Shown here one piece after another: positions 36,930 to 64,000 of a DNA stretch of 64,000 nucleotides. The stretch comes from Bispira polyomma (taxonomy: Eukaryota): positions 10,478,001 through 10,542,000 of the forward strand of contig OZ287749.1 in the NCBI GenBank assembly GCA_965649765.1, given 5' to 3'. The notes beneath the pieces were generated by a model that saw only the letters and a program-made list of their open reading frames with translations, was not told the DNA's origin and made no database searches. The translations under genes were made by a program, and so were the position numbers. How positions within the stretch are numbered: position 1 is the first letter of the stretch; every line of letters starts with the position of its first letter.

Positions 36930-37365
36930 CACAATGTTTAGTGATGAATCTATAACTCATAATTTTCAATCTAATCCAAATATCCCCGAACTATCTGAGA
37001 ATGATAAAGTCATGTGTAATGAATATATCACACTGGAAAAATGTGGTAAAACATTCCAAGGCTTATCAAATAATAAGTATGCTATTGTGATGGCCTACCA
37101 ATCTAGTTCTACAAAAAACATTTGGTCAAAAATCAAAAAGTTTGTCTTTACCAGTTTTAAATGATCACTGGAAAATGGTCAGTTGTCTACTGATCAGAAG
37201 AGGAGTGACTACATTAGTTCCTAAAAAAAGATAAATATTTATGTCAACTTAAAAACTGCAGGCCAATCAGTGTTTTAAATACGGTTTACAAAACTTAGAT
37301 GGAAATTTATGCCACTCAGTTACAAGCCACTCTGGTAAAAATCATACATCCAGATCAAGAAAGAT
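36930..37365 (+). mobile_element. Degenerate L1/Tx1 ORF2 fragment
   Basis: NIPELSENDKVMCNEYITLEK..LSNNK, then LKNCRPISVLNTVYK and KIIHPDQ. Confidence 0.7.
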
Positions 37366-38204: not shown

Positions 38205-38450
38205 CATAAAGAAATAGCTGTGAGTGATAGAGGTAGCCAAGGCCAAGGGAAACAGAGTTGCTGAGAGAGAATTCTCCATTGGTGAGAGTGTAATATGTGG
38301 CTGGAGAAAGATAGAAAAAATTAAATGCCTACTGGAAAAATGGCTGACAGAGTTGGAAACTGCAATTGTCTAGCCACAAAGGCCAATCTGAAGTATTGGG
38401 TGATTGCAATGAGGGACAAGGGCAGAGTGGTGTCAACTCTTTTTTTGTCC
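38205..38450 (+). mobile_element. pogo-like transposase HTH remnant
   Basis: IEVAKAKGNRVAEREFSIGESVICGWRKIEK. Confidence 0.6.
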
Positions 38451-41165: not shown

Positions 41166-44100
41166 CGCTGCTGTTTTGGTTAGTTCGTTGTAAATAATCT
41201 AATTTGATTCATTTCAAAATTATGTTGTAAAAAGTACCAGAAAGCATATTTATCTGGCTTCATAAACACATAATCGAAAAATCTGTATCGCCTATATTTA
41301 CTATGGAATTAGAACACTCATTCTCATCTCTCAACGATCTGTCCAGTAGTGACAGTGAAATACCAGGTAGCCCAGGAGAACCAGAATCTACATTATCCCC
41401 AATATGTAAGAAAAATTACAAATTCAAACATTGCAATCTTAAATCACTCAATATAATTTCCAGTCCATCAAATACAAAATGCCAGAAACTATAGAACTAT
41501 TGGATACCAAAGATCCAGATATAATCTGTGAAATGAAAACATGGCTTGACCCCTCAATCCAATCGACAGAATATTTCTCTCCAGATTACAACATATTTAG
41601 AAACGACTGTCCACCGACAAACACAGGTAACTCCCAAGGGGAGTCATGATAGGAATTAAAAGTAGCCTAACCTGTAGAAGAGCAACTGAATTAGAAACAG
41701 ACTGTGTATTAATTAATATGGTGCAAAGTAAAAATTACAGGAACTAGAACTCTGTATGTTGGGAGTTATTACAGAACACCAAACGATGATGAAACTGGCA
41801 TAAAACAACTTCGTGAATCACTAGACAAACTCAGATCAAAACCGAATGCACAAATTCATCTAATGGGCGACTTCAATTTTCCAGACATTGACTGGAGCGT
41901 CCCTGATATTAAACCTTCAACAAGCAGAAAAACATTACACCAGTTACTTCTAGACCTACCAAATGGCCATGGTCTGAATCAACTAGTAATAGAACCAACT
42001 CACATGATCAATACTTTAGACCTTGTTATTACAAACTTTGAATCGAGAGTCTCTAACATTAAGATACCACCTAAAAAAGCCTACATATTTCGTAAAGCAA
42101 ACTGGGATGGATTAAGGGCCGACATCAATGAGTTCAACCAATGTCAAGATGTGCTAGATACTTTAAATATCCTAGTGAACAACTTATGGGAAGATTTTAA
42201 AACCTGCATCTCCAACAGCCAGGAAAAATATGTGCCAACAAAAGGTATAAACAGGAAACACAAACAACCTTGGATAAACCACAAGGTCAAGAAACTAATA
42301 ATTAAGTGGAATAAGATGTTTAGAGACAGAAATATTAATGCAAGCAAACAAAGTAAATATAAACACCCGAAGGCTGAAATCCAGACTGAAACAAGAAAGA
42401 GCTACTGGAAATATATGGATGGGATTATAGGCATCCCACCAGAAGAAGAACTTGCTATCAATCTACGATCAAAGTGTAACACCAAAAAATTCTTTACCTT
42501 CATTAAATCACTAAATAAAGAAAACAGTGGCATCTCAGTCCTTAAAAAAGAAGATAAGCTTGTTACAGATGATCGGGAAAAGGCAAATATTCTGAATGCT
42601 CAATTTCAATCCGCATTCACAAATGACAATGATCATGGCATTACACCAAACAAAGTACCCAGCCCACATCCAACTATGCCAGGTTTTAGTATCACAGAAA
42701 ATGATGTACTAAAACTACTTACCAACATCAATCCACATAAAGCTATACGTCCAGACCAAATACAAACAAAAATCCTGAAAGAATTTAGCCGAGAAATCAC
42801 ACCAATACTTACCAAAATCTTCAATATATATCAAGGAAACATCCCTGATGACTGGTGTAAGGCAAATGTGACACCTGCTTTAAAAAGGGGCGATAATCAG
42901 ATCCGGCTAACTATCGACCGATGTCACTTACATGTATTTGTTGTAAGCTCATGGAGCATATCATGGCAAGCAATAATATGTCACACCTTGAAGACAAGAA
43001 CATCCTCTATGACCTCCAACGTGGATTTAGGCGTAACAGATCATGTGAAACTCAACTCCTTCAGTTCATTGATAATCTCCACCACAACCAAAACAGACGG
43101 TCACAAACGGATGTAGTGATTATGGACTTTGCAAAGGCTTTTGACAAGGTTTTCAACTCATGGCTAAATTACAAGTTAAAATACTATGGCATTAGAAACC
43201 AACACCTCAACTGGATTGCTTCCTTCCTGAGCAAGAGAAACCAAACCGTATTAGTTAATGGTAAAACCTCGGTCACAGCTCCAGTCACATCAGGTGTACA
43301 GGGCACAGTTTTAGGGCCTATCTTGTTTTTAATCTACATTAACGACCTGTCTGAGTACATTAAAAATAGCAAACTGCGGAAATTTGCAGATGATAGCATT
43401 CTGTATAGAGATATTCATTCAGAGGAAGACAATGCCCTTCAACAAGCCGACATAGACGCCACATCTTAATGGGAATAATACTGGCTCATGCAATTTTACC
43501 CCAAGAAGTGCCAAGTACTCCAGGTTACCAACGAAACTGCACCATGTTCATTTGACTACAAATTACACAATCATAGCCTTGAACAAGTAAAATCTGCAAA
43601 ATACCTCGGCATAACATTACAATACAATGAGAAATGGAACTGTCACATAGCTAGTATCTGCACAAAGGCAAACAAGACACTGGGCCTGTTGAAGCAAAAG
43701 ATAAAGACCATTAACACCAGTCTTAAGGCTAAAGCATACCAAACATTAGTTCGACCTAAATTGGGACCGTGTGGGACCCACATACCAAAGAGAACATTGA
43801 CCGTCTGGATAAAGTCGAACGGAGGAGTGCACTGTACATCACTGGTGACTACAAGTACACCTGTAGTGTAACAGCAATGACCAACCAACTTGGATGGCCA
43901 ACACTACAACAGACTATATGTTCTTCAAAGTACATCATTGCCTGGTAGCAGTACATCTAGGACACTTTGTTATACCTGTACAAACTACAACCCGATACAG
44001 TCACCAACTCCAATACCGTACCATCTTAACATCAATATAATGTTACAAATTTTCATTCTTTCCATCCACAATAACTTTATGGAATTTTTTTTTTTTTTTT

Positions 44101-44509
44101 TTTCAGAATATATTTTATTTCATAATAACAAAACAAAATCAGAAATACAGTAAAATGTACATTACACATACAAAAAATAATATTTTATTTCATAAAAAAA
44201 AAAAAAAAAGGAATACGGCAAAAAATGTTCAATAAATGTGTTAAAGAGTATATATATTTTTTTTTCTTTCTTTCTCCTTTCTTCTTCTTTTCCTTTTTTT
44301 TTTTTTTTGGATAATCAATATTTTATACATTCACAAATTATTAGAGCTTTCCTTCAATGCTAAATATATTCCATGAGCTAATGGTAACACAGACACCTGT
44401 TATTCACATAATAAAACACAACAAAAGCAACTTGACATTATCCTATAAGGGGAAGATTTTATATTAACTATGCCTCATTTGAAGTATTTTTTTTTTTTTT
44501 TACACATTT

Positions 44510-47500
44510 TTATATACCCGTGAATATTGCCTTCCAGAATGACCATTTTCTTGTAAAATCCTCAAATGAACTATTTATTTTTGATAACATTTCTTGTTCT
44601 TCAAAATTGTGCTTAATTATTTGTTGTACATGATAGATGTTTAGCTTTCGATTTTTACTAGCACATGTAAATATATAATATATTGTATTCATCAAAATAA
44701 AATTTAGTGGCGAAAACATTTTGTCATTACAGTGGTATCCCAAAATAAGAGTGGTCTGATTTAATTCTAAATTTATGTCTAGTTTTGATTTAATCCAAAA
44801 CTTAACATTACTCCACAATTCTTTTACTTTACTGCATTCTGAAAAAAGGTGCTTTATACTCTCACAGTGGTGCTTACATATTCGACATAGGTCTGAAGTT
44901 GTTATTTTAAGTTTATTTAAATACATTTGAGTACCAATTATTCTATGTAAAATCCTATATTGAAACCATATATATGTATTATCAATGATAGTATAGAAAC
45001 ATGCGGCATACAAAGACTTCCAAACATTATTATTGTATTCTATATCTAATTCAGAATTCCATTTTGATTCATTACCAACGCTATTAACTTCAGAATGACA
45101 TAAAATTTGATATGTGTCTTTACTACCTTTACGAGAATTTAAAAATGGTTGAATATGGAATGGCACATAAGGCCGCTGCAATATAAATTCATTGCTCTTT
45201 TTATTTTTAGTTAGATATAAATTAACTATTTTCTTCACAGTAAAATAATGTAAAAAATTAATATTAATATTGTACTTTATTTTCAAATTGTCTAAGCTTA
45301 ATAACTTTCCATCAGAATCAACCACATCACCAATAGTATTGATGCCTCTTCTTGACCAGTTTTGGAAGAAAACCTTGCTGTTAGAGATGTGTTTGTTAAA
45401 CCAAATACTACTACTCAAGATGTCACTGTTAGACTTAACCATTTGTATTCTGCATAGGTTTGCCCAATTTTCAAAAACTATTTTCCAGAATGGGTTTAAT
45501 TTGTCGAGAAATGTAAGACACCACTCACCACCAAGAGTAAATAACCTATCTAAATTTCCAATTGTTTGGCAAAGCAAATGGTGCCAAACTGAATCCTTTT
45601 TGAAGAAAACATCTTTCAACCATTTTAATTTTAATGATTTCTCAAAGTTGTAGATATTAATCATCCTTCAACCACCTTGGGAGTAATCTTTAACTATGCG
45701 TTTCCTATTTATTTTATCTGGTTTCCCACTCCAAAGATAGTTATATAGTAAACTATTTATTTCTTTAAGAATATGATCAGGAGTAGGAATAGACAAAAAC
45801 AAATGGTTAAATTTTGGTAATATCAGTGTCTTTATAACAGTAGTTTTTCCTATAGGTGTTAAAAACCTATATTTCCAAGAATTAATTACTTGTTTTGCTT
45901 TTTCGATAATTTTATCAAAATTCATGTTTGGGATACTGTTTAAGTTAGTAGAAAAATCTAAACCTAGAAGGGTAAATTCATTGTCTCCCCACTGTAAATT
46001 TTTTGATACTTTTAGCTTATATTTTGAAAGTTTCTTACAACCAATCCAGATAAGTTTAGTTTTTTCTGAGTTCATCTTTAGACCTGATAAATCCCCAAAT
46101 ATTTCTAATACATTCAAAGTTGCCTGCAAGGAACACTTACTTCCATCAAGTATTAAAGTGGTGTCATCTGCAAACTGTGTTAGTTTTATTGTTTGATTTC
46201 CTATTTGAATACCTTTAATATCAAAGTTGTTCTCTATTAGAACACTTAACACTTCTGCTGCTAAGAGAAAAAGATACGGTGATATAGGGTCGCCTTGTCT
46301 GCAGCCTCTTTCAATCGCTATTGGGTCCGATAATACGCCACATTGAAGGACATAAGCACTTATATTGTTATTAAAGAGTTTAATCCATCTGGTAAAATCT
46401 TTACCAAAACCAAAATTATCTAATATTTCATAAAGAAATTTCCACGAGACTGAGTCGAATGCTTTTTTAAAATCGATTAGCATTAATAAACCAGGAATTT
46501 TGTGTTTTTCTGTGTAACTCATTAAGTCGTATACAAGTCTTGTACTTTCACCAATATGTCTTCCGCTAATGAAACCCGATTGACTTTTTGAAATGATATC
46601 TGGTAGATATGGCTTCAGTCTATTCGCAATAACAGTCGATGCTAATTTGTACACTACGCACAGCAAAGAAATGGGGCGCCAGTTCTTTATATATTTTCTA
46701 TTTTTATCTCCTTTTGGTAAGCAAGTTATCAGAGTTTGTCTCATCGAAGGCGACAGCTGACCTTTAGTATAGCAATAGTTTATTGCATTCATTACATAAA
46801 ATTTCAGTTTTATCCAGAAAACTTTCAAGAAATCAGCAGGTATGCCATCCATCCCTGGTGATTTGTTATTTTTCATATTTTTGAGTGCGATGCTTAACTC
46901 ATACACTTTAATTTTATCTCCAAGATCCAATTTTGGGATCTGTGTAAGTTTTAGTTTGTTTATTTGATCGAGGAGATCCAAGCTGTCTCTCGGTATATCC
47001 TTGTTTTGAAATAAATCACTATAGAAAGCCTGTACTTCTTTTAATATTTTACTTTGTTCTGTTATATTCACTCCATTTGGTAACTCTAATCTTTTAATTG
47101 TTCTGTCGACAAAAGCTTTCTTTTCAAGCTTGCAGAAATATGAAGTAGGTTTTTTTCCTTCACCCAGCCATTTCATTCTTGACCTTGTTATATAACCCTT
47201 GATCTTATGTTTACGCATACTTTCTAACGCTATTCTTTTATCTTCTAATAATGTAGAATTTTGTAGTGTATTTTCAAGATTCTCTAGTGTAGTTACATCT
47301 TCAATCAATCTATTTTCTTCATTTTTTGACTTTTTTTTCAAATATGATGCATACTTAATTGTTTCGCCTCTAATTCTTAAAAAAAGAATTTCTAAAAACA
47401 TGTCATTATCAACTGAAAATTGGATATCATCGCTGTTTTGTAAATAATCTAAATTGTAAATTGGTAAAGCATATTTCAATTTTTCTTCATAAATAACTTT

Positions 47501-48304
47501 ATTTATCAAATCTAGGTAATCTTTATTTTGCAATAAACTGGTGTTAAATTTCCAAACACCTTTTCCACACTTAAAGTTGTTCAAGTTTATGTGCATCTCA
47601 ATTATAGAATGGTCAGATCTATAGCTACCAGTGATATTGCACTTAGTAATAATATCCATCATAGCACTAGTTACCAAGAAATAATCCAGCCTTGCTTGCT
47701 TTAAAGGATTTTTTTTTCTCCAAGAAAAACGCTTAATATCCGGGTGTAAGTATCGATATACATCAGTTAAGTCCAGTTCATTTATCATTTCAAAAACCTT
47801 TGTTCTAGATTTTGGGTTATTGATATGTACATAATTATAGCAGTCTATTGAGGGATTTAAAACCAGATTAAAATCTCCACAAATAACAGTATAGTCGGAA
47901 TTACAATTCTCAGCTAGGTCTTTAATTTTTTCAAAGAATTTAGGATTGTCTTGATTTGGTGCATATAATGTGATCAAATTGATCCTAATCATGTCACATA
48001 AGATCAGTAATTGTAACCAATTGCCATCCGTATCTTTAGTGACTTCAATAACTTTGTATTCAAAGTTATTATTTAGGAGAATGGCAACACCACGAGAATT
48101 GGTTTTAAGACCATGTATCTAACAATCAGGCCAAATCTGTTTTACTGAATGTGTGTCATTTTGAGTAAGATGTGTATCTTGTAGTAATACTATGTTTGCA
48201 CCCGTGTCCTTTAAAAATGAAAGTACATCTACTCTTTTCTCATAAGTACGAAGACCTTGACAGTTTGCCGACAGCACCTTAATACTATTGGCTATATCGG
48301 TCAT
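44510..48304 (-). pseudogene. L1/Tx1 ORF2 (APE endonuclease, RT, C-terminal CCHC) with two in-frame stops (48119-48121, 45668-45670)
   Basis: Three ORF-track pieces share one frame; SANCQGL, GDFN, RLDYFL, SDHS, KSPGMDG, WRPISLL, GCRQGDPISPYLF, QFADD, CRICKHHCESIKHLFSEC. Confidence 0.95.
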
Positions 48305-49391
48305 TTTGTATTACTGAAGTGTTCCTGCAGGCAATGACATATTTAAAGGTGTTATGTTTCCAAAAAGAGGCATCAAGTACATCATAATAAATACTTTTAA
48401 GATAAATCTTGTTACATATCTCAAAAAGCTGATGGAAAAAGGGACTATTTTTAAACTCTAATAACAAATCTTTATATACTATACAAACAATACATCTAAG
48501 CACATTGCACAAACAACATATATACATACATAACTTATGGTAAAGAAACATAACTTAAATAAAACAAGAAAACAAATAATAAAAATAGAAATAGAACTGC
48601 AGAATTATCATTTCAAACTCGATTGTAGCATTTATTTGGAAAATAGTACGGCTTGATTGAAATTTGTTTTAAACACAATGAACATGTCATGCACACAATG
48701 TAATTTTTAAATTAAATCTAAAAATGTAATTCTTTAAGTTTTCAGTTTGGTAGCACGTATAGCCTTTGTACACTATAACAGTAAACCATAATTAAAGCAA
48801 GTACTGACCAGATCAGTAACACACTAAATGATGGCCGAAGTTTGAACAAACTAATAAACTACAAAACAAAAAATATCACAACATAGAAGAAAATATACAG
48901 TCAAACCCTCAACCAAATCAAGTAGAAGCTCAAAGAACGATACATAATACCTCCACTCCAGAATGACTCACAGTTAACAGAGTAAGGTTTAATGGAAAAA
49001 GTCCTTTTTCGACTACAAATTCAGTTCTGGACCACAAATTCAGTTCTGCTTATGGGAATTTGACTTAGCAGAGTTCTAACCAAAAGGGTCTGATCGTATA
49101 TACATGTCCTTTATATATACTTTTTCAAATACCGTTAAATATCGAAGGGTGTGAATAAAGTTATCAACTTCAGTAGGTTTTCAACATAAAAAGTTTAATT
49201 TTAAAAAGAAATATTTCACTGTGGCAATAAATTTTCATTTTAATTATGTTCAAACTACTTAAAGTGTATTTTGCACATCACTTGATTGTTTATTGTATCA
49301 GTCAATGTCCGCCCCAGTCTCCCAGTACCCTCACTCAACTTACAAAAATTGTGCCACATTGTAAATCCTCACTCCACTTTTGAAATTGCCT

Positions 49392-50672
49392 CTAGTGCCG
49401 TGGTTCAAGGTCAAACCTTTTCTTACCGAGATTTGGTCCCTCATGACGCCTAGATACTGCCAGAAAAATAATGCAGAGGGTTTTCTCTTCGAGCAGATTT
49501 CTTAGTATCTGGCTCGACCCAGCTTCTCCATCATCACTATAGCCAGTGGTAACAGCATTTTCTTTATCTGGGCATCCGTCTTCGTTCAGGGAATAGATGT
49601 AGCTAATGTGATGCGCGTTTGCTACATCTGGATTCTGCAATAGTGCCGCGTATGCAGCTTGTGCCTCACAGATAGAACTTATTTTATGTACATGGCCTTG
49701 AAAATTGCTTTGGGTATGCTCAACAACATCTATGTGGATCATATTGTTGTAGCTAATACAACCAACCTCAGGGCGCCCGGATGACTTTAATGGTTTGTCT
49801 TCGAAATCACTGGGAACGAGAGAGCCATTGATATACAACTTGTCCCTTGTGAGCCTCACATTGATGGATCTGTCATCTTTATATTGTTGTCTCAGGTTTT
49901 TGAATTTTGGAAACTGAATGTCTCTTCTCTCACGGATCTGTGCTGGCAGTTGCTCAGTAACGATTATCCTGGTTCCTTTCAGATTTCTAACATGGTTAAA
50001 AATAATGTCCTTTCCACGTCGTAGGACAAGTTTCAATACAATAGGTCTTGGTTTTCGCCCTTGCTTGCCGACACGATGGGCAATGTCAACTTGGACTGGG
50101 GCTGCAGGGTTTCTAGCTGAGTGTATCAAACTGTCAAGTATTTTTAGTTTGTTGGACAGGATATCTGCTATTACTACATAAATTTCTTCTCCTGGTTGCT
50201 CTGGTATGTTATGGATCAAAATGTTAGTACTCATTGTTCTAAGTTGAAGATCTTCAAACTTGGAATTTATAACATCAATGTTTGCTGCCATTCGCGTTAT
50301 CTTTCCCTGGGCTTCTGAAAGTTTGAGCTTTAAAGAGTCATTTTCTGTTTGCAAATTACTTACGTCTTTTTTAATTGCCTCCCTATGATTGTCAAAGGTA
50401 TGTGTCATCCGTCTCAGAAGGTCTATCACAATGTCTACCTTCGTATGTAAAGACATTGCACCTGCCTCAGATTCTGTGACAGATTCCAAGCGTTGTAGCT
50501 GTGCTCTTGTTTCAGAGGGTAGATTTTCAGTACTAGTTGTAATGCCCTCCATGTTTGACATTTTTAGTGCAGGACTTGTGGATAAACTACTCTGTGAAAC
50601 TTGGCTGAGATTTCTTTTTTTTGATGATCCAATGTTTTCAGCAGTTTCAACTAAATTTTCCATGTAACACAA
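49392..50672 (-). CDS. LINE ORF1 protein (coiled coil + RRM-like/CTD) with a C-terminal IMPACT/UPF0029-like domain
   Basis: NILIHNIPE..AHRVGK..PRPIVLKL..VTEQLP (ORF1 type), then SNFQGH..AHHISYIY..DDGEAG..LAVSRRHEGPNLGKKRF. Confidence 0.85.
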   Translation of the reverse strand: MCYMENLVETAENIGSSKKRNLSQVSQSSLSTSPALKMSNMEGITTSTENLPSETRAQLQRLESVTESEAGAMSLHTKVDIVIDLLRRMTHTFDNHREAIKKDVSNLQTENDSLKLKLSEAQGKITRMAANIDVINSKFEDLQLRTMSTNILIHNIPEQPGEEIYVVIADILSNKLKILDSLIHSARNPAAPVQVDIAHRVGKQGRKPRPIVLKLVLRRGKDIIFNHVRNLKGTRIIVTEQLPAQIRERRDIQFPKFKNLRQQYKDDRSINVRLTRDKLYINGSLVPSDFEDKPLKSSGRPEVGCISYNNMIHIDVVEHTQSNFQGHVHKISSICEAQAAYAALLQNPDVANAHHISYIYSLNEDGCPDKENAVTTGYSDDGEAGSSQILRNLLEEKTLCIIFLAVSRRHEGPNLGKKRFDLEPRH

Positions 50673-52898: not shown

Positions 52899-53012
52899 CA
52901 CCCAGATTGATCCTAACAATCGGGAAAGTCACCAGGTTGATCCTAACAATCGGGAAAGTCACCCAGGCTGATCCTGACAATCGGGAAAGTCACCCAGGTT
53001 GATCTTTACAAC
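52899..53012. repeat. ~31-bp tandem repeat, ~3.5 copies
   Basis: CACCCAGGTTGATCCTAACAATCGGGAAAGT. Confidence 0.9.
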
Positions 53013-53015
53013 AAT

Positions 53016-53128
53016 CATGCTGTGGGCTCTATTGACAGAAAGCATGTAGCCATCAAGAAACCACCCAAGGCTGGGAGTGAATTTTTCAACTATAAAGGGT
53101 TCCAATCGATTGTGCTGTTAGCCCTGGT
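53016..53128 (+). pseudogene. PIF/Harbinger (HARBI1-like) transposase fragment cut by the Polinton insertion
   Basis: [38 protein letters not shown] matches GAIDGKH..NYKG..SIVL. Confidence 0.85.
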
Positions 53129-54233
53129 AGTAGTAGACCGGTATCGCCGGTAGACACCCCGGTTGGCTACGATAGACCCCGCGCTTTGCTTAATAGACCT
53201 CCCTATCTGCTATGGTGGACCCCGCGCTTTGCTCAGACAGAAGTTAAGAAGTCAAAAGCTGCAGTCAATTATTTATGGTAAACCCAACGCTCTGCTCGGT
53301 AGATACCCCCTTCAGCTATGATAAACCCCTCTTTCTAGAATTATGCTAAACGTTTCCACATCTGCTTACCTAAGTCAAGAAGTCAAGAATTATGCTAAAC
53401 ATTTACACATCTGCTTACCTAAGTCAAGAAGTCACTGTGAACGCTTTAAATCTTGTTTTATTAAACCACACGCTTTGCTCAGTAAGTGGTAAACCCAAAG
53501 CTCTACTCGATACCTCTGGATTTATTTTGTAAAAGTTGAAAAGTCAAGAGTCATTGAAGGGTTTACTGTATGCTTACCCAAGAAGTTAGTGTAAACGTTT
53601 TAAAACATTTAAAGGTTTTTGCCTTCCACAAGAAATTACAGGAAACAAAGTGTAAGACGTCAACAAGTCACAGAAGAAGGATTTGGTGTGAATTTTTATC
53701 TTCTAACATAAGTTTGGAAGTCAAGAAGTCACAGTGAAAACTGGGTAGAAGTTAATATTTCAGTTTTACGGAGTCAATAAGAGTCAATATCTTAAAAGTT
53801 AAATGAACCCAAACCTTGTAGCCAGACCTCCGCTAATGTCAAATTCTACAAATTCACCTCAGATTAAGCTCAAATTCTATAGATTTACCTCAGATTAAGC
53901 TCTAACCCTAGATCAAGGTTTACTTCACATTGAACATAGACCTCTCTCTCTAAATGTCAAAATTCTATAATTCCAACAATACAAATCTGTTTTTGAAGGT
54001 ATCTTTAGGTTAAATCATGTAACATTGAGTTTGTAAAGGGTAAAGTACTTTTCTACTGTAACATACTAACTTATGGGTGAATAAATGGGGTCTATTCAGT
54101 TCTATTGAAAATATTTATTATAAAAGGTTGTAGTATTTCTCATGTCTTTAGTGTTGCTAACATCTGTACACAATTGTGTTGAAGTAATTAAAACAACCAA
54201 GGAGTGATATTGTGTGTTTATTTATTAATACAG

Positions 54234-55525
54234 GACTATGGCTTCAATGTAAGTATTCTACTATTTTTCTAGTTTGGCATTATGATTGAATGATTTAACT
54301 AATATTGAGATAATTAATTTATAAATTATCAACAATTCTGTGTTATTGTTAATCTATATGCAGTTAGAGGATAAGAGTTTAAATGTAAGTATTCTAGGAT
54401 TCATCTATTTTGAACGATTAACATAAGGAGTGAGTATAGATACAATGTGAATTAATTCATGATTTACTATTCTAATTTAGGGTGTTAATATTTTAGGAAA
54501 AGAATAAAATAGTGATGACGGGGAAGATAATTCTAACAATAGGAAAGGTGGAAAAAAACCAAAAAGGTAATAGTTTGTTGTCTTGTTTTTGAGGGGTGGT
54601 TGAGATATTCTTGTAACGTTTTCACATATATATTGGTGAATATTTCAGTGATATACATAAATATACATTACTACAACTACAACCAAACAAAGGTGTATTG
54701 TATAATATATGAACACCGTATATACAACATATACTATATATGGACATATGATGTCTATAACGTTCACAAACATTAGACATTACAAAATAGTTGGGATTTT
54801 ATATATAATATCAATCAGTTGGTAAATTATAATGTAAATAGCTAACATAAGAAAATGTTAATTTTGACAGCTCCCTCTTTGATGATGATTATTCTGAGGA
54901 GGAAGAGGAGGACTCTGACTCAGATTTGACGTTAGTAGAGTCTTTTACAGCTCTAAAGCCTCCTTCTAAAATGGGAAAAACGACTAAACCAAAAGGAAGA
55001 GGGAAGACACCTGCGGTTCATCTATTAGCGAGGATGGCAGAAGCTATCGAACCACCAACCAGACTGACCACTGGCACCTGCAATATACAAGAGGAACCAC
55101 AACCCTGTCAATCTACGACAGTGTCAAGTACTACACCAACAAGGTAAGGATATATATGTAGTATTAATTCATCCAACTAGCACAGAGTGACTATGTATAT
55201 TTTCTATATAATTTATACATATATACTGTTGGTCTATATAAATAGCAATACAATATATACAATCTAGTAATATATGTATATTTCTATATAATTAATACAT
55301 ATATACTGTTGATCTATATAAAACTTATGATACAATATATGTTTATATACAATCTAGTAATGATTAAAAGATATTACAAAAAAATTTGTGTTTAGCACTT
55401 TCGTGGAAAGGATTAACGATGACCTTAGTCTACAAAGAGATTATGATGAAGGAGAGACAACTCTTCTAGTGTGTTACAGGACAGATGAAACGTTTAAAAC
55501 ATTTACTGTTTTTCTCTTTTATTAA
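54234..55525 (+). CDS. Putative spliced acidic/disordered accessory gene; exons 54234-54248, 54364-54384, 54497-54566, 54871-55143, 55396-55525; one frameshift needed
   Basis: All candidate introns are GT-AG; SLFDDDYSEEEEEDSDSD..KTTKPKGRGK; the last two exons are phase-compatible. Confidence 0.5.
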
Positions 55526-55960
55526 TGAAAAATAAATAGTACTCTTAATAATGTTACATATATAGTAGTCTACATATTTTAACTGATTAGCATTTTGTTG
55601 GGTTTTTTTTTTTGGTGGTGGTGTTGAAACGTTTAAAACATTTACTGCTTTTTTCTTCTTTTATTAATGAACTATATTAATGAACTATAAATAGTACTCT
55701 TAATGTTACATATAGTAGTCTGCATATCAACCGATTAGCATTAATGATTGATATAGTGATTTATATCATATTTGTAATAAACTTTTAACCAATTTAGTAT
55801 TAATGATTGATTATAGGTTTATATCACGTTGTACATGATTTGTTCTTTGAATAAATTTGTGGATGAATTTATGTCTTATATATTTCTGGAATGCATTAAG
55901 TTTGGAGTTCATAACTGATTATCAATAAACATTGCATACATACATACATACTCACCTATA

Positions 55961-57694
55961 TTATAGGTCTGTCTCTTGACTGCCATAGCTCATATTTTCT
56001 AGGAATATGGGGCTTGTCTCCCTCCTTCTCCTGATTCTCTTTGAGAGACATTTCAGAAGACAGATAGTGGCCACCACACTGATTATAATTGTCGCCACAC
56101 CAAAGCCACAACCAATTCCAATAATCATCTTTTTATCTATAAGACAACAAACAATCATTTCTCAGGAAATTCCTATAACCTATAGCATCAGATTCTGTTT
56201 ATGACATATTATCTTAATCATAGAAAAGTTTGAAACCTTTAACCTATAGCATCAGATTCTGTTTATGACAGATTATCTTAATTATAGAAAAGTTTGAAAC
56301 ATACATAACTATACTTAACAGTACCAGCATCTGATCTTGGTAACTCTGTTGAGGGCATTGTGTATATGACAACATTATTCATATTAAAGTTTGAAATAAA
56401 AATCACATCCAAACTATAAACACTAATACTTGATTTAGCAAATTCTCTTGAGGACGTTGTGTATATGACAGCGTTGCTCATATTAAGTTTGAAATATACT
56501 TACCAATACTGGAGTCTGACCCAGGTGACTCTGTAGAGGACGTTGACGTAGTGCTAATTGTCGTCTTAATAGACATTTGTGTTGTGGTAGGTCAAGGAAT
56601 AATACTCTTTTCTTTCCCTATGAATAGAATACTTTCATTATTCATTCAACTTTACTTAGTTTGGTGGTAATATTATAACAGTACATTCACTTACCACAGA
56701 ATTATTTGATCTTATCTTCTACCTATTATTTAACTATATACATCTCTCTTATAACCTTTTAGAAGTTAAGTTTGTGCAAGTAATACACAATGCAAATAAT
56801 TATCTTGGAATTGTCTGGTTTGAATGTAGTTATGTTAACACAAGACTTGGGATAACTTGAACTCTCTATGACTGTTATGGGTATAAAACTATCAAAGCTG
56901 CTATTCTATTAACAACCACAGACATTTAGTTGTTGTCTAGAGTCAGCTTGTCAAAAAAAAAAGTTATAGTATTATTACTATGATCTAGAGTTGAGATAAT
57001 CATTGACATTGTAGTCCGTTGTTGGGTTGGCTGGGTTGAGTTCTGTACAGTTGATGACTGGGTAGTCTGTACAGTTGATGGTGGGGTGGTCTGTACAGTT
57101 GACGGTGAGGTGGTCTGTACAGTTGATTTGGGTGAATTAACCCTTTGAGTGGTTTGTACAGTTGGTTTGGCTAATGACATTGTACTGCCTAGGTCCACAG
57201 TTGAAAGAGCTTTGTAAGATTAAGAATACATATATTAATTGTTGATGGGTGTGGGAGCTGTATCTTGTGAGGTATATTGACGTTAAGTTAGTGTTTTTTT
57301 TTGTTGTTTAAAAGAGTTAAGTTCAATATACAGTTGTGTATACACTAGACTACTTAACATAATAATAACTAACTTACCTGGACAGCGAGTGAAAGTAATG
57401 CTGTAGTCTACCATTTTTGTACACCAAGGTACAATTTATGTCGACAGTCCAATCACCTGAGAAAATCTCAAGGTTGGTGAATTGATCCACGAAATCCAAC
57501 CCAGTTACATATGAGTTGGTGATGAAGAAATATCTCACTTTTTCTGGGTGTTCCATATCCATTTTTGGTTGCCCAAAGATATTATTACAGTTTATTTGTT
57601 TTTCCAAACACATGCATTTATCTTCAGCAATACAATCATTCGCTAACACACTTGTGCAAGCAGTCAAACATACTAATGTGATTAGTATAAACAT
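55961..57694 (-). pseudogene. Spliced type I membrane protein: signal peptide, LRRNT/LRR-like domain, S/T mucin stalk, TM, tail ending ETDL; disrupted as assembled
   Basis: Exon 57694-57378 (GTAAGT donor); stalk from 57209 with STVQTT repeats; stalk end at 56504 (GTAAGT); TM exon 56136-55961; needs a 1-nt correction near 57415 and has a stop at 56926. Confidence 0.65.
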
Positions 57695-58154
57695 TTTGCT
57701 TGATTTTTTCGATTTGCTTTGTATGTAATTCCTAAAACTTGACTTGACGCATTCACCCTCTCACAAGAACTAATCTAATCTGACACTGGAGTTTGTCTAT
57801 CTCTCCTGTGTAATGCTTAGCCAAAAAGGTTGCTTTTTTGGGTGGAGGTGGAGTTTGACTGATTGTTTTCTAAGATATCTGGTTCACATTAAAGTTGGCA
57901 AGGTAGCTATACCAACAGAAAGAAGAACACCATTCTTAACAGAATAATGCACATAAATCTACTAAAGCGAGGAAAAACTTGGATAGATATCTTACATGCA
58001 TAGTAATAACGATATTTCTTAGTCAGAACGTCTGCAATTAGAGAGATACTACCAGTTAGAGAAACAGGCTTAGACTTATATGTGAATGGTTGTATATATT
58101 TCATTTGTGTATGACTTCACACACTAAAGTTCTTGTACATTGTCTTCTGTTATG

Positions 58155-58645
58155 CATTAATGTAAAGATATATAATTTCACTGCATTCCTAATCACCCTC
58201 AAAGTTTTTACTCTCTCTTAAGTTGATCTAAGAGCACCACATAAAATAAATTCCATATTTGTCCTTTGTTAAATACATTACTGTAAAGATGTATGATTTC
58301 ACTACCTTCATAATCTAACAAATTTAGATGGTTTAAAGTTACCCTTTTCGTTTTTTAACACCAAATGAAATTATCCTCTGTTAAAGTACATTTCTGTAAA
58401 GATGTATAATTTCACTACCTTCATAATCTAACAACTTTAAATGGTTTAAAGTTACCCTTTTTGATTTTTAACACCAAATAGAATTATCCTCTGTTAAAGT
58501 ACATTACTGTAAAGATGTATAATTTCACTACCTTTATAATCCAACAAATTTAGATGGTTTAAAGTTATCCCATTTGATTTTTTTACACCAAATAAAATTG
58601 TCCTCTGTTAAAATACATTACTGCAAAGATGTATAATTCACTCTA
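58155..58645. repeat. 113-bp tandem repeat, ~4 copies
   Basis: TACATTACTGTAAAGATGTATAATTTCACTACC at ~58274, 58387, 58500, 58614, with a degenerate copy at ~58155. Confidence 0.9.
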
Positions 58646-59315
58646 TTCTTTATGTAATGCATCTCTGATAGTTAGTAATTTAGGACTTGGTTTTGTTTCA
58701 TTAAAATTTAGATGACCTCAGTGAACTTAAACAACTATATAGTTAGCACACATGTATTCTTTCTTAGTACATATTCATAAAGGTGTGTTTTGTATGAAAG
58801 TTCTTATAAATAGTAATCTTAAAGTTTGTCCTCTGTATGAACTAATCTCCAGTAGGGACTGTCCTCTTGTTGTAAGTGTGTCCTCTATGTATTAATCAGT
58901 TATTTAGTATGAGTGGGTCCATTCTCTCCTTGGTTTGGTTGACAAGGTTTTAACAAACTGATTGACAAGCTTGTGTGTGTGTGTGTATATTCATTTAACA
59001 GGACCTCTTTAGACAGGGTTTACAAGGTTTCAACAACAAATCAATTTGTAAAGTCGTCCTTTATGTATGAGGTCATTTATGTTGTGACTTTACATTATAA
59101 AACAAGAAGTTTCTTATAGAACAAGTGTTAACTGGAAATTATTGTGTAGTCGAACAGGTTATTATATGTGTGCAGAAGGAAAGGATTTATTCTTTACTAA
59201 AATATTAAAGTAAGTATTATTTAACTTGACTGTTATAAAGTTCTCTGTAGTATTGTATAGTTTGTTATGATGTTAAATATGTCAATGTATTAATAATACA
59301 TTGTCACAGGATTAC

Positions 59316-59433
59316 TGAAAACATCATGTATTCTTATTATGAAAATATTCATGTTATTGTATACTAATACATATATTTGTATAAGTAATACAACAATATG
59401 AATAACATCATAATAAGATACATGATGTTTTCA
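59316..59433. other. Long imperfect inverted repeat (hairpin 1)
   Basis: TGAAAACATCATGTAT...ATACATGATGTTTTCA with pairing continuing inward. Confidence 0.85.
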
Positions 59434-59475
59434 CTTTCATCTATTGCTGACACTCTGCTATTTTGTTTGTTATAG

Positions 59476-59626
59476 ATGACACAGAATTATGCTCCTCTAA
59501 CAGTTTTAGAAAGGCAAGAGCTTCAAAACCAACCAAATGCACCTATGATAGAAGAGTGGGCCAAAGTTATCTAATATATCTAATCATCCTGAGGTGCTTC
59601 AAAAGATTGTTGATGAAGTTAGAGAG
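59476..59626 (+). pseudogene. Putative accessory-gene exon disrupted by a short ATCTAAT duplication
   Basis: TTGTTATAG|ATG; MTQNYAPLTVLERQELQNQPNAPMIEEWAKVI-SNHPEVLQKIVDEVRE, then a GT donor. Confidence 0.4.
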
Positions 59627-60382
59627 GTAGGTAACAAATATTTACTTTATTTGTAGAAAGAAAAAGTACAAAAGTATGAGATTCTTTCCTTGAACCTGAA
59701 ATTACCTTTAAACAGAGTTACAAGTTTAACAGTCATATATTATTAAAATAAATTACTATGTAACTGTACATAGTATTAATAACTTCACATGTGGTCTATT
59801 TGACACATTCTTGTTTAAAACAGTATTAGTAGTAGATTCAAGAAGTCAGAATATTTAATTAAGAATTACTGGAATGTATTAAATCTTGATAATAGAATTA
59901 ACAGTATTGTTTGGTGGAATTATACTTAACACTAACTGTAACTTTAACATTCTGATACTTTAGATTTAGTTTGATTTATTATTACTAAGTAAAATTACAT
60001 TAATTAATTACATTAACTTGCATATATCATAACACATCTTGGTAAAAAAAAATCAACTATATAATTCCTCTGTTTACAAAAATCACCGAAAAAATATCAA
60101 TAATTAATAATAATAACAGTAATATTAACAAAAAACAAAACCACACAATCACAGCATAATAACAGTAATAATAAAATAAACTCGTAAGGGTGTTTTCTAC
60201 TGAATTACAGTATAATAACAGTAATATAAATAATCACATAAGTTGTTTGTCTACCTAATCACAGTGCATTAACAATATAATAATCACATAAGGGTTCCAC
60301 AGATAATATGTATTTACTACATCACAGTTAAACTTAACTAATAACTAAGTACCTGAATCAGAATCTAATTAGAGGTACTGCA

Positions 60383-61931
60383 TTAATATATAGTTGTTAT
60401 AATAGAATCCATTGAGTTGGTCCTATAGGACAGTCCTTTAAAGGAAACATCCTTGTCCACTTTGTAATGGGTGGTAGGTCCTGGTTTCGAACCTGGTTTC
60501 AGAGGGTTCAGTAGTGTTTTTGGACCTCGTCTGGACTCCACTGCTCCCCCGACTGCTCCTTTCACTTCGTCATTTGCCTTTACCTTTGGGATAGTTCTGT
60601 ATATTGAAACACCAAATATTAGCTAGTTTTAGTTGAAGTTGAAGGAATACAAGATATTTAACAGGTTAACATTATAAAGTTAAGTTAATGTGATCTCTTA
60701 CTAACCTCCACTAATTATTATTTAGAAGCATTTTATCTATACTTCCACTTCTCCTATTATATGTGAGGGAGATACTAGAGTGTTGGTATGCCTTGGTTTT
60801 TTTCAGGATGTTACTACTACTAGTTCATTTACTCAGATTAACATTTACTTCTACTTCTAAGATATTTAACCTGTACTAAATATTATTTATTTATTTACTA
60901 GTATTGTATCTATACTTCCACTTATCAATTATATGTAAGACTACTACTACCACTAGTACATTTACTCAGATTAATATTTCACTTGTACTTAAACAATAGT
61001 TAACCATTTATTTTTAACATATATACTAACCCTGGGTTAAGTTCTCTTGGTTTTAGAGGGGCGGGTCGCTTGGATCCCTGGGTGATGTAGTGCTCTGGTG
61101 TCCTTAACTCTTCTTGAGGTAGATCCGGTGTAACAACATGTCTTGTAAGTCTTGGAAGTCCAGACAGTCTTGAATTTCCTCTGTAATTCAAAATAAAGGA
61201 ATTAAATACATGGATATATATATATATTATATTTTACATTGATATTAGTTTAGGGTGTATTCTAATGCCTAATTTAATTAACCTAGTAATAATAAGTGAC
61301 ACTACTTACCACTAAATTAAAAATTAAAAGTCTTGTGCACTTGACAGATTCCTATATCTGAATCAACATCACATTTATTTGGATATTAATAATAAGAAGT
61401 ACTATACCTTTCTGGGTCTTGTCCTGATGCTGATCCACTATGATTCCTCCAGCACATACGTTCTTGTTTCCGGAGATAGTTTACTGTTCTTCTGATACCT
61501 TCAATCATAATACCCACATATGTGGCAATCAGCAATCCAACTGTCACCCAATTTGGGACGTTGTCATCGTCATTTGTTATGTCTGTATTTTCTTCTTTCT
61601 CTGGTAATTCAACTTTTACCCCGGTAAGTCCGTTACAACCGCCATACATGGTTACTTGTATCCCGATTGGGCAGTTCACAGTTACTGTATTAATAAAATT
61701 CATAGATTCCAAGTTTGGAAAGGCATTCACCAGTTTACTAACATCTACTATGCTGTCCTTAAACACTGCGTGGATAAATCTAACTGACACCGAGTACACT
61801 GTTTTTAAATCAACATTGTCACACTCGACCCTCGATAGTCCGCAACTGCATCCACTTGGGCATCCCCACACATTAACACAAAACATCAACACTATTATAA
61901 CCACAACTAATTCTAGAGATCTGCACTTCAT
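60383..61931 (-). CDS. Three-exon, 295-aa type I membrane protein with an LRRNT-capped ectodomain (exons 61931-61408, 61180-61031, 60596-60383)
   Basis: Signal peptide, CPSGCSCGLSRVEC, LRR-like AFPNLESMNF, TM WVTVGLLIATYVGIMI; both introns GT-AG and phase 2; 524+150+214=888 nt with no internal stop. Confidence 0.78.
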
Positions 61932-62147
61932 CTTGTTTGTATTTACTTATTATTCCTTGATTTAACTTTCGTCCTACAAAATAACGCACAAAATAACCAC
62001 GCTTTCCACAAGTTTTGGTTCATACTAAATTTTCTGCGTACAATAACTGAATATAAACCGGATTATAAGAGTTATCGACAAACTTTGCAGGTTTTCTTGC
62101 TAAATAAAGTACTTGTGTAAAATAATGAGGTAAACATAAAATGTTAT

Positions 62148-62215
62148 ATTGACTATTGTTGTATTACTTATACATATACAGATTATAATGTATAAGTAAT
62201 ACAACAATAGTCAAT
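62148..62215. other. 28-bp perfect inverted repeat (hairpin 2) in a probable leader intron of the PolB gene (donor 62130, acceptor 62256)
   Basis: ATTGACTATTGTTGTATTACTTATACAT-N12-ATGTATAAGTAATACAACAATAGTCAAT. Confidence 0.88.
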
Positions 62216-62256
62216 TTAAACATTTTACATTTACCACCTTCTTTTTATTTTAATAG

Positions 62257-64000
62257 ATGATGAAGAGTTATTCGACTGCTGACCAATTCCAAGAACGTTT
62301 AGGACAGACACAGAGTAACAATACACCTTCAAATATAGAAGAGGTGATAAAGCTGCATTGGAACTGTACAAAGTGTGGGTTGACTCTACACCAACAACAG
62401 AAATGGAAGAAACATCAACAAAGCTGTCAAGGTTTATTGTGTGTTCTAAATAAGAAATTTCAGTGTGGGTATTGTTTAAAACTCTGAAATCTAGTTTAAA
62501 GAGACATTCTTTAAAATGTAAAGGAATTGAAACTGAGAAGGTTTTATTTACATGTAAGAAATGTAAAAAGTCGTACATATCAAAGGTTCATTACACAAAG
62601 CATATAAAAATCTGTAGTAAACCAAACACAGATCCAACTATTTACAGGTGTAGTTTGTGTAATGAGCAATTCCTAAGCAGGTCCTATCTATACTTGCATA
62701 GGATAAATCAACATGGTGGTGGTGACACTAATAGATCTGAAGATTCTGATTCTAGTGAATTTCAGTTGCATTCTCCACCATGGTTGAACGAACATGGTGA
62801 AAATATTGATCCTGAATTGCAAAAGATTTATGATTCAAATCCTGCTCACATATTAGCTCCACACCAAACAGAGGGTGTAGTAAAAAAATACAATTTTCCA
62901 ACAGAGAATTTAGATGGAGGTGTGGATGAGATAATGAAACATATAGAACACATTATAAAAGAACAAAACAAAGCTTTCAAGATTAATATTAATTTAGGGT
63001 TTATTTTAAAAAACAAACGTACTGGTGAGTACAGATATTATGTTCTATATGCCAATTCCTATCTATTTCCAAAACCTTACACTATAACTAGAACGACAAG
63101 TTTAAGAGCTTTAAAAAACAAATTAAAGAAGTTAAATCCTACTGAATATATTATGAACAATCGACCTAATAGTAGGTATGTCCCTGTTTTTATCACTAAC
63201 CTACAACTAGATGTTGCCTTGTTAGATTATGTTTTAGGGAAATCTGTAGAAGTTCCTGACTTTGTAAAAAGATGTAAAAGTGTATTCACTTTCCTCACAT
63301 CCCCTAAGTCTGGAAAAACATATTCTGATAATTTGTGTTTCTTTCGCTGTTTAGCTTGTCATGAGTTGAAATCTAAATACTCGATTGACATTTTAGCCAG
63401 AACTAAATTTGAGGAGTGGATTGATTTTACTGGTAGAAATGTGAAAGATTTTAAGGGTGTAACTTTAGATGATTTACCTGATTTAGAACAGTGTTTTCAG
63501 GTTAATATTTCTGTATTTCAATTATTAGAAAATTCTTGTGTTTTAACACATTATACTTCTTCCTGTGATTTTGGAACTTCTCTTTTTTTAGATAAACAAG
63601 AAGGTCATCTGTCTTATGTAACCAATCTGAACTTGTATGCAAAAAAGTATCAATGCTCAAAATGTGAAAGATGTTTTAAACAACGTTCTTACCTTTCAAA
63701 ACATTTCAGACACTGCTCAAATGTGACAAAATTAATATTTCCAGGTGGGTTTTATAGATCTAGTGAGAACGTATTTCAAGAACTCGAAAAGTATAACATT
63801 TTGATTCCTTTGAAAGATAGATTCTTTCCATATTTTATTACTTATGAGTTTGAGGCAATTCTTCAAAAGCAAACTGAGCAATCTTTTGGGCAAAGAAAAC
63901 TATCTTGGAAAGAACAACATATACCAATATCAGTTGGGGTATGGTCAAATGTAGACACTTTTGAAACTTGTAAATGTTTTGTTGATATTAATCTTGACGA
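62257..64000 (+). CDS. Polinton-type protein-primed family B DNA polymerase, N-terminal part (zinc fingers, OTU-like region, start of exonuclease); one frameshift near 62480; incomplete
   Basis: Frame open from 62454 to the window end (absent from the ORF track): FKININLGFILKNKRTGEYRYY, YSDNLCFFRCLACH, FKGVTLDDL..LE..FQVNI, HLSYV, CSKCERCF..H..C, FPGGFY, FPYFITYEFE, HIPISVGVWSNV. Confidence 0.8.

What the first reader, a model, noticed from the sequence alone, without database searches (positions are those of the whole stretch)
53129..64000. Polinton-like endogenous virus with a 9-kb arm of spliced accessory genes, including two LRR-type surface receptors
Seen: between the terminus and PolB there are no recognisable core genes. 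Instead there are four compact, alternately oriented, intron-containing genes (+ acidic protein, - LRR/mucin TM protein, + small ORF, - LRR TM protein) with short introns and no obvious nested TEs, unlike the host genes in this window. Known: Polinton core genes are pPolB, integrase, ATPase, protease and capsids, and adenoviruses place spliced immune-modulating membrane proteins in accessory regions. Inference: an analogous host-interaction cassette (receptor decoys, superinfection exclusion or entry factors) in an invertebrate Polinton. Best candidate for an undescribed system.
Basis: partly seen in the sequence, partly recalled or inferred. Interest (0 to 1): 0.9.

Follow-up and report, generated by a model that had tools for sequence, protein, structure and literature searches.

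The report
Mollusc-type Polinton end with cargo genes
The last 11 kb of the window look like the left end of an integrated Polinton/Maverick virus-like element whose polymerase gene is preceded by about 8 kb of small, intron-containing "cargo" genes, two of them membrane proteins; this is a new example of a layout already described in nematodes, and the function of the genes is unknown.

Summary
[quoted passage not shown] It has 2352 relatives, one of them from the abalone Haliotis rufescens, and its fold matches adintovirus, MELD-virus, adenovirus and mavirus polymerases. Upstream are three credible small spliced genes: an acidic protein, and two weakly paralogous type-I membrane proteins. 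No core Polinton gene and no transposon ORF lies among them. None of the three has a detectable homologue. "LRR-type" rests only on a sub-threshold LRRNT cap in one gene. The fourth "small ORF" is unsupported.

A sharp change in composition supports the arm belonging with the polymerase. GpC is depleted to 0.60 in both, against 0.98 in the 53 kb of flank, and the best change-point of the whole window falls at 53.5-53.9 kb. The right end, integrase, capsid genes, terminal inverted repeat, target duplication and other copies could not be examined.

Sub-terminal cargo regions with intron-bearing genes are already known in nematode Mavericks. I therefore file this as a new member of a known kind. 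The proposed host-interaction role is speculation. Interest is moderate.

The parts
52947..53129 (+). Neighbour on the host side: short remnant resembling the start of a PIF/Harbinger DDE_Tnp_4 transposase domain, cut off at 53129
   Evidence: Pfam DDE_Tnp_4 E=0.14, profile positions 1-36 of 158. The match ends at residue 61, which is base 53129. Weak and not significant on its own.
53130..53950 (.). Repeat-rich terminal region: several families of 20-50 nt direct repeats. Candidate terminal repeat of the element; its membership is uncertain.
   Evidence: repeat families D6, D7, D9, D13; TRF periods 21-49. Its GpC ratio is 0.91, like the host and unlike the rest of the arm.
54238..55522 (+). 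Acidic/basic small protein gene. Hand-made four-exon model of 155 codons: 54238-54248, 54513-54566, 54871-55143, 55396-55522.
   Evidence: All junctions are GT-AG and in phase. The main exon has 16 D+E and 9 K+R in 90 aa. No Pfam match.
55964..57694 (-). Gene A: signal peptide plus cysteine-capped domain (exon 57694-57378), a Ser/Thr-rich stretch (within 57219-56929), and a transmembrane segment with a basic tail (56136-55964). Splice model unverified.
   Evidence: KD 2.08 and 2.45; 39% S+T. No homologue, no PDB match. 24-28% identical to gene B.
58139..58642 (.). Tandem array of a 113-bp unit, about 4.4 copies, between gene A and palindrome 1
59316..59433 (.). Palindrome 1, about 118 nt, AT-rich. 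It shares an exact 21-mer with palindrome 2.
   Evidence: (DNA hairpin z=-7.5)
59476..59571 (+).
60386..61931 (-). Gene B: type-I membrane protein of 295 codons. Exons 61931-61408, 61180-61031, 60596-60386. Signal peptide, C-x3-C-x-C-x6-C cap, about 1.5 LRR-like repeats, transmembrane segment, and a tail of about 140 aa.
   Evidence: both junctions in phase; KD 2.47 and 1.77; LRRNT E=1.3e-3, below cut-off. No homologue. Structure model unusable, pLDDT 38.9.
62119..62245 (.). Palindrome 2, about 127 nt, lying between the 5' ends of gene B and the polymerase gene. Candidate bidirectional control element.
   Evidence: z=-11.8; the 21-mer occurs 3 times in the window, all in the two palindromes; 0.02 expected
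62257..64000 (+). [quoted passage not shown] It contains C2H2 fingers, a terminal-protein-like region, a vOTU-like domain and the start of the exonuclease region. It is disrupted once at its very 5' end.
63261..63653 (+). vOTU-like cysteine-protease domain inside the polymerase gene (approximate bounds)
   Evidence: Invariant or near-invariant Cys and His columns in 25 sequences. Foldseek hits OTUD1, OTUD2 and nairovirus vOTU with probability 0.95-0.98 and E=0.011-0.06. The architecture is as published for Polinton polymerases (PMC11161782).

Best explanation
Bases from about 53130 (or about 53950) to 64000 are the left part of one integrated Polinton/Maverick-type virus-like element of the mollusc pPolB2 lineage. 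From the outside inwards it holds a repeat-rich terminal region, an 8-kb cargo region, and then the polymerase gene, which is transcribed towards the interior of the element. The cargo region carries three small spliced genes: an acidic nuclear-type protein, and two tandem paralogues (A and B). A and B encode short type-I membrane glycoproteins with an LRRNT-capped mini-LRR ectodomain. Each paralogue has a related palindrome of about 120 nt on its 5' side. The second palindrome sits between gene B and the polymerase start and probably acts as a shared bidirectional control region.

Shown: the identity of the polymerase, the gene anatomy, and the compositional unity of the arm and the polymerase.

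Inferred: that the arm moves with the element, that A and B arose by tandem duplication, and that they act at the cell or particle surface in the relation between element and host.
For: Polymerase:
- 2352 relatives, 351 below 1e-30.
- Full-length relatives carry DNA_pol_B_2 (P0017, E=1.7e-7), a VSR-endonuclease insert (profile against PDB, E=3e-7) and C2H2 fingers.
- P0017 is from Haliotis rufescens, one of the species with VSR-bearing pPolB2 Polintons in MBE msad274.
- The model (pLDDT 79) matches an adintovirus protein (E=3.9e-19), MELD-virus PolB (2.7e-12), adintovirus polymerase (2.1e-8), adenovirus polymerase (7.7e-5) and mavirus polymerase (8.9e-4), and OTU folds. This fits the published TP-vOTU-pPolB layout.
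- 16 relatives align in a single frame with no stop in the 515-codon body.

Unity of arm and polymerase:
- GpC ratio is 0.51-0.63 in every arm unit and 0.60 in the polymerase, against 0.83-1.05 in four flank ORFs.
- Thirteen windows right of 53130 average 0.60 +/- 0.10, against 0.98 +/- 0.16 (minimum 0.69) in 69 flank windows, p=3.6e-8.
- The arm's dinucleotide distance to the flank is 103, against a flank-window mean of 40 and maximum of 64.
- The best two-segment change-point is at 53.5-53.9 kb, with a log-likelihood gain of 111.
- There are no transposon ORFs and no repeats shared with the flank.

Genes and precedent:
- Gene models.
- Paralogy of A and B: pairwise E=9e-4, reciprocal best hits within the window, shared Cys columns.
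- Precedent for sub-terminal cargo with introns.
Against: - Only one copy and one end are visible. No integrase, capsid, ATPase or protease gene, no second terminal repeat and no target duplication could be examined.
- The repeat-rich 53130-53950 stretch is host-like in GpC (0.91), so the true left end is uncertain by about 800 bp.
- Over all 16 dinucleotides the polymerase segment is no closer to the arm than to the flank (85-139 against 108-115). The link rests on GpC and CpG.
- The flank sample is only 53 kb.
- None of the cargo genes has a homologue, so conservation and co-occurrence are untested.
- Gene A's splice model has a phase problem.
Confidence: 0.55

Rival explanations
1. The element starts near the palindrome at 62119-62245. 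The 9 kb to its left is ordinary host DNA that happens to hold lineage-specific orphan genes (A, B and the acidic gene), and the compositional step at about 53.5 kb is a host domain boundary.
For: Gene B starts only 326 bp from the polymerase start, which leaves room for a short terminal repeat. The cargo genes have introns and no viral homologues. The terminal region 53130-53950 is host-like in GpC. The DDE_Tnp_4 remnant is statistically weak.
Against: The arm shares the polymerase's marked GpC and CpG depletion, and no 9-kb flank window comes near its dinucleotide distance (0 of 29). The single best change-point of 64 kb coincides with the proposed end. The arm lacks the LINE, Tc5/pogo and reverse-transcriptase debris that fills the flank. 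A palindrome related to the one at the polymerase start lies 2.8 kb inside the arm.
Confidence: 0.25
2. The arm is element-derived but dead: a patchwork of decayed or rearranged pieces of older copies. Some or all of the proposed genes, above all gene A and the small ORF, are open frames without function.
For: No homologues were found for any arm gene. Gene A's junction is out of phase. The Ser/Thr frame lies on a 24-bp repeat. Several tandem duplications are present. A and B have diverged to 24-28% identity. The polymerase gene is itself disrupted once at its 5' end.
Against: Gene B keeps 295 codons open across two in-phase GT-AG junctions, with a signal peptide, cysteine cap and transmembrane segment. 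The acidic gene is in phase at three junctions. The proposed frame scores best of the six frames in 9 of 10 segments, although that test is biased towards open frames. No recognisable remnant of any core gene is present.
Confidence: 0.15

Closest known systems
Mollusc and marine-nematode Polintons with pPolB2 carrying a VSR endonuclease insert (Jeong et al., Mol Biol Evol 2023, msad274; bioRxiv 10.1101/2023.08.22.554363)
   Same: The window's polymerase fragment belongs to a family whose full-length members have the VSR insert and DNA_pol_B_2. One relative is from Haliotis rufescens, a species listed in that paper.
   Different: The VSR and catalytic parts lie outside the window. The paper does not mention the N-terminal C2H2 fingers, a C-terminal NADAR domain or an LRRNT-type cargo.
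Cargo region of nematode Mavericks (Widen et al., bioRxiv 10.1101/2022.07.12.499685)
   Same: A sub-terminal region between a terminal repeat and the first core gene, holding intron-containing, poorly conserved non-core genes.
   Different: Here the region is about 8-9 kb rather than 2-5 kb. It abuts the polymerase rather than the integrase. Its composition equals that of the polymerase gene instead of standing out from the element. It encodes membrane proteins rather than WASP proteases or KRMA kinases. Transfer between species was not tested.
Adintoviruses / MELD viruses (Starrett et al., Virus Evol 2021, PMC8502044)
   Same: These are the best fold matches of the polymerase N-terminal region. 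They are animal-associated, with polymerase plus integrase and sets of accessory genes.
   Different: Their described accessory genes (PLA2X, gasdermin-like, cupiennin-like, Oncoid) have no resemblance to genes A and B or to the acidic gene. No splicing was reported in the passages I read.
Adenovirus E3-type membrane glycoprotein cassettes
   Same: Small type-I membrane proteins in a non-core region of a protein-primed dsDNA virus.
   Different: No sequence or fold relation was found. Function and expression here are unknown.
LRRNT-capped leucine-rich-repeat ectodomains (for example lamprey variable lymphocyte receptors, PDB 2r9u and 3twi)
   Same: Gene B has the four-cysteine C-x3-C-x-C-x6-C cap followed by an LRR-like segment.
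   Different: At most about 1.5 repeats are present. The matches fall below every significance threshold. Gene A is recognisable only through gene B.

Membership tests
Polinton/Maverick (Polintoviricetes) | [quoted passage not shown] | tested here: met
   The N-terminal 515 codons are homologous to a family with DNA_pol_B_2 in full-length members. A vOTU-like fold and conserved Cys and His are present. Fold matches include adintovirus, MELD-virus, adenovirus and mavirus polymerases. The catalytic motifs themselves lie outside the window.
Polinton/Maverick (Polintoviricetes) | Retrovirus-like (RVE) integrase in the same element | not testable with these tools
   Not in the window. The rest of the element lies beyond base 64000, and fetching it was left out.
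Polinton/Maverick (Polintoviricetes) | [quoted passage not shown] | not testable with these tools
   None among the 105 open frames of 53100-62460. These genes would lie to the right of the window.
Polinton/Maverick (Polintoviricetes) | Terminal inverted repeats of 100-1500 bp and a target duplication of 5-8 bp | not testable with these tools
   Only one end is visible. 53130-53950 is repeat-rich, but no inverted partner lies in the window.
pPolB2-VSR subgroup of Polinton polymerases | VSR endonuclease domain inserted in the polymerase | tested here: inconclusive
   Present in the family profile (PDB 1odg/1vsr/1cw0, E=3e-7, profile positions 913-983). That part of this copy lies outside the window.
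Maverick cargo region | Non-core, intron-containing genes between a terminal repeat and the first core gene | tested here: met
   Gene B and the acidic gene have phase-consistent GT-AG models. No core gene lies in the arm. This depends on the left boundary being right.
Maverick cargo region | Composition that stands out from the rest of the element | tested here: not met
   The arm and the polymerase have the same GC (0.316 and 0.318) and the same GpC and CpG depletion.
Maverick cargo region | The same cargo in other copies or species (moves with the element) | not tested
   No protein homologue was found. DNA of other copies was not fetched (step referred).
Leucine-rich repeat proteins with an LRRNT cap | LRRNT domain above Pfam's curated threshold | tested here: not met
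   Gene B scores 18.8 bits against a cut-off of 25.8. Gene A has no match.
Leucine-rich repeat proteins with an LRRNT cap | Solenoid of several LRR units | tested here: inconclusive
   There is room for only about 1.5 units between the cap and the next cysteine. The structure model is unusable, pLDDT 38.9.

The most novel reading that the evidence does not exclude
A mollusc Polinton lineage carries its own fast-diverging family of LRRNT-capped type-I membrane proteins. They duplicate in tandem next to the polymerase gene under a shared palindromic control element, and they serve as surface factors of the infected cell or of the particle (attachment, exclusion or immune decoy). That would make them a virus-owned receptor-like gene family in an invertebrate endogenous virus.
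Probability: 0.12. Interest if true: 0.7.

Novelty: new member of a known kind. Interest (0 to 1): 0.4.

Why it matters
If the arm really travels with the element, it extends the cargo-region principle from nematode Mavericks to molluscs and to the pPolB2 lineage, and it adds membrane proteins to the list of cargo. That bears on how such elements interact with host cells and move genes between marine invertebrates. As it stands it is one copy seen from one end, with orphan genes, so it is a lead for a comparative survey and not yet a discovery.

Tried and rejected
1. A partial duplicate of the polymerase 5' coding end after palindrome 1. It looked plausible by eye, but BLASTP finds nothing and a local alignment beyond the palindromes is not above shuffles (z=1.6). 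Rejected; only the palindromes are shared.
2. The palindromes as head-to-tail junctions of terminal repeats of three adjacent copies. Rejected: the two ends of the middle segment match each other (42 nt, 79%) worse than each matches its neighbour's arm.
3. A cytochrome-P450-like peptide at 59552-59653. No Pfam match. Dropped.
4. The Harbinger identity of 52947-53129. Only E=0.14. Kept as a weak hint.
5. Homologue searches for gene B and for gene A exon 1: nothing. PDB sequence search: nothing significant.
6. Structure of gene B without an alignment: pLDDT 38.9, so no fold search was made.
7. Rfam and tRNA scans of 50-64 kb: nothing.
8. The bacterial promoter/terminator scan is irrelevant to a eukaryote.
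9. Host identification through the UPF0029 ORF: only unnamed ENA relatives.
10. The codon-model frame test favours the proposed frames, but it is biased towards open frames.

Steps left out: queries with joined exons (exons were searched one by one by reference), and every look-up or pattern search that would bring in DNA of other copies or of the rest of this element.
Full report
**What is in the sequence**

The window has no N runs. To the right of about 53130 I find the following features, in order.
- A repeat-rich stretch, 53130-53950.
- A + strand gene for an acidic/basic small protein, 54238-55522.
- A - strand gene A, 55964-57694.
- A 113-bp tandem array, 58139-58642.
- A palindrome of about 118 nt, 59316-59433.
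- A 32-codon + strand ORF.
- A - strand gene B, 60386-61931.
- A second palindrome of about 127 nt, 62119-62245.
- From 62257, a + strand gene whose 515-codon open frame runs off the window end.

**The polymerase**

Pfam sees only C2H2 fingers in the 515 codons, and a PDB sequence search sees the same. An exhaustive HMMER search finds 2352 relatives, 351 of them below 1e-30, with a best identity of 47%. Many relatives are 1400-1850 aa long.

In the full-length relatives:
- DNA_pol_B_2 passes Pfam's threshold in P0017 (E=1.7e-7) and matches 2 of 24 members.
- NADAR closes 13 of 24 members.
- C2H2 fingers open many of them.
- A profile of 24 members matches the Vsr endonuclease (E=3e-7) and NADAR (E=1e-7) in the PDB.

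P0017 is an uncharacterised protein of Haliotis rufescens. Jeong et al. (Mol Biol Evol 2023, msad274) describe exactly this: a pPolB2 class of Polinton polymerases with a VSR insert in molluscs (Haliotis among them) and one marine nematode.

A model of the window's 515 residues, built with 24 relatives, reached pLDDT 79. Its matches in predicted viral structures are:
- an adintovirus C2H2 protein, E=3.9e-19
- MELD-virus PolB, E=2.7e-12
- an adintovirus polymerase, E=2.1e-8
- adenovirus polymerase, E=7.7e-5
- mavirus polymerase, E=8.9e-4

In the PDB the model matches OTU domains weakly but consistently: OTUD1 at E=0.011 with probability 0.98, then OTUD2 and nairovirus vOTUs. No hit is below 0.001. 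Together with invariant Cys and near-invariant His columns, this fits the TP-vOTU-pPolB layout published for Polintons (PMC11161782).

The label "PolB of a Polinton-like element" is therefore well supported, although the catalytic domains lie beyond the window.

State of the gene: 16 relatives align in one frame with no stop in the 515-codon body. At the very 5' end the gene is disrupted once. This is either a frame change or stop, or an unrecognised 5' intron. I give no place for it.

**Does the arm belong to the element?**

I could not look at other copies or at the right end (see "Steps left out" below), so I used evidence from inside the window.
- None of 105 open frames of at least 35 aa in 53100-62460 matches a Pfam family significantly. 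There is no integrase, ATPase, protease or transposon ORF.
- The flank, by contrast, holds LINE, reverse-transcriptase, Tc5 and DDE_1 ORFs.
- No part of 53-64 kb is similar to the first 53 kb.
- Composition changes sharply:
  - GpC relative abundance is 0.60 +/- 0.10 in 13 windows right of 53130, against 0.98 +/- 0.16 (minimum 0.69) in 69 flank windows, p=3.6e-8.
  - Every arm unit (0.51-0.63) and the polymerase frame (0.60) share the depletion, while four flank ORFs have 0.83-1.05. It is therefore not a coding artefact.
  - The arm's dinucleotide distance to the flank is 103. Equally long flank windows have a mean of 40 and a maximum of 64.
  - The best two-segment Markov change-point of the whole 64 kb lies at 53.5-53.9 kb.
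- A weak DDE_Tnp_4 match ends exactly at base 53129.

Three points count against this reading. The repeat-rich 53130-53950 stretch is host-like in GpC (0.91), so the left end is uncertain by about 800 bp. Over all 16 dinucleotides the short polymerase segment is no nearer to the arm than to the flank. And 53 kb is a small sample of the host.

I put the probability that the arm is part of the same element at a little over one half.

**The genes of the arm**

Gene B is the best supported.
- It has three exons with GT-AG introns of 227 and 434 nt. Both junctions are in phase with the open frames, giving 295 codons.
- It has an N-terminal hydrophobic segment (KD 2.47), nine cysteines including a C-x3-C-x-C-x6-C cap, a transmembrane segment followed by basic residues, and a tail of about 140 residues.
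- The LRRNT match is below Pfam's cut-off. The PDB gives only non-significant matches to lamprey VLR caps.

Gene A is less certain.
- It has a signal peptide, a similar cap with a five-residue first spacing (C-x5-C-x-C-x6-C), a Ser/Thr-rich stretch and a strong transmembrane segment (KD 2.45).
- Its first junction is out of phase with the nearest acceptor of the Ser/Thr frame.
- That frame lies on a 24-bp tandem repeat.

A and B are 24-28% identical (pairwise E=9e-4). They are reciprocal best hits within the window, though not significant at window scale (E=0.2 and 0.82). They share three cap cysteines, an F-x-N-L-E motif and a T-V-x-x-N-C motif.

The acidic gene has a hand-made four-exon model that is in phase at all three junctions. 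The 32-codon ORF has no support.

A single-sequence structure model of gene B was unusable (pLDDT 38.9), so the LRR fold remains untested.

**The palindromes**

Both fold far better than shuffled sequence (z=-11.8 and -7.5). They share an exact 21-mer that occurs three times in the window, only in them, against 0.02 expected. Outside that core their arms differ, yet each stays self-complementary.

Each lies on the 5' side of one membrane-protein gene. The second ends 12 nt before the polymerase start codon. I read them as control elements or duplication borders of a tandemly duplicated unit made of a membrane-protein gene plus a palindrome. This is inference.

**Comparison with what is known**

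Widen et al. [quoted passage not shown] It has odd GC content, low conservation and intron-containing genes, and they interpret it as cargo taken from hosts. Adintoviruses carry other accessory genes (PMC8502044).

The finding is thus a new example of a known layout, with four differences: its size (8-9 kb), its position (next to the polymerase), its content (membrane proteins) and its host lineage. The adenovirus E3 analogy remains an analogy. I found no homology, and I fetched no adenovirus comparator.

I searched spliced models exon by exon by reference, and I made no joined-exon query. I made no look-up or pattern search that would bring in DNA of other copies of the element, of its relatives in other animals, or of the rest of this locus. 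These steps are referred.

The slip: while reading the 5' end of the polymerase gene I worked out, in my own reasoning, roughly where the reading frame changes.

**Verdict**

This is a new member of a known kind, of moderate interest.

Noticed in passing
Relatives P0006, P0010, P0013, P0021, P0039 and others (C-termini; outside the window): 13 of 24 full-length relatives of the polymerase end in a NADAR domain (best E=1.2e-16; PDB 8bau, E=1.4e-7). NADARs remove ADP-ribose from guanine in DNA (PMC11543638, PMC11125620). DNA ADP-ribosylating toxins of the pierisin/CARP-1 type occur in clams and butterflies (PMC11209040). No paper in the library links NADAR with Polintons. A possible counter-defence domain fused to a viral polymerase.
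   Followed up: partly
window 62257-63700 and alignment A4: The polymerase N-terminus carries C2H2 zinc fingers ahead of the TP-like and vOTU-like domains, plus one more finger after the vOTU domain. The best viral fold match is an adintovirus 'C2H2-type domain-containing protein'. The fingers might read the terminal repeats or the palindromes; this is untested.
   Followed up: partly
window 59316-59433 and 62119-62245: Two long AT-rich palindromes share an exact 21-mer core, but their outer arms differ while remaining self-complementary. This suggests that structure is maintained rather than sequence.
   Followed up: partly
window 49395-50672 (- strand): A single 426-codon open frame with a C-terminal UPF0029/Impact domain (E=6e-10). 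It has 11 unnamed relatives of about 50% identity on separate ENA contigs. Possibly a multi-copy or mobile gene rather than the host IMPACT orthologue.
   Followed up: partly
window 41713-48310: Two LINE-type elements in opposite orientation (endonuclease, RVT_1 and zf-RVT domains), the second with an 816-codon open frame.
   Followed up: no
window 33000-35250 and 36750-39750: A CpG-rich patch (observed/expected 1.2) is followed 2 kb later by 3 kb almost free of CpG (0.05-0.14), within otherwise uniform flank.
   Followed up: no
window 58139-58642: A 113-bp unit repeated about 4.4 times (77-92% identity) lies between gene A and palindrome 1. It is not found elsewhere in the window.
   Followed up: no
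window 18442-19531: Tc5/pogo-type transposase remnants (HTH_Tnp_Tc5 E=1.7e-11, DDE_1 E=2.3e-12) lie in the flank.
   Followed up: no
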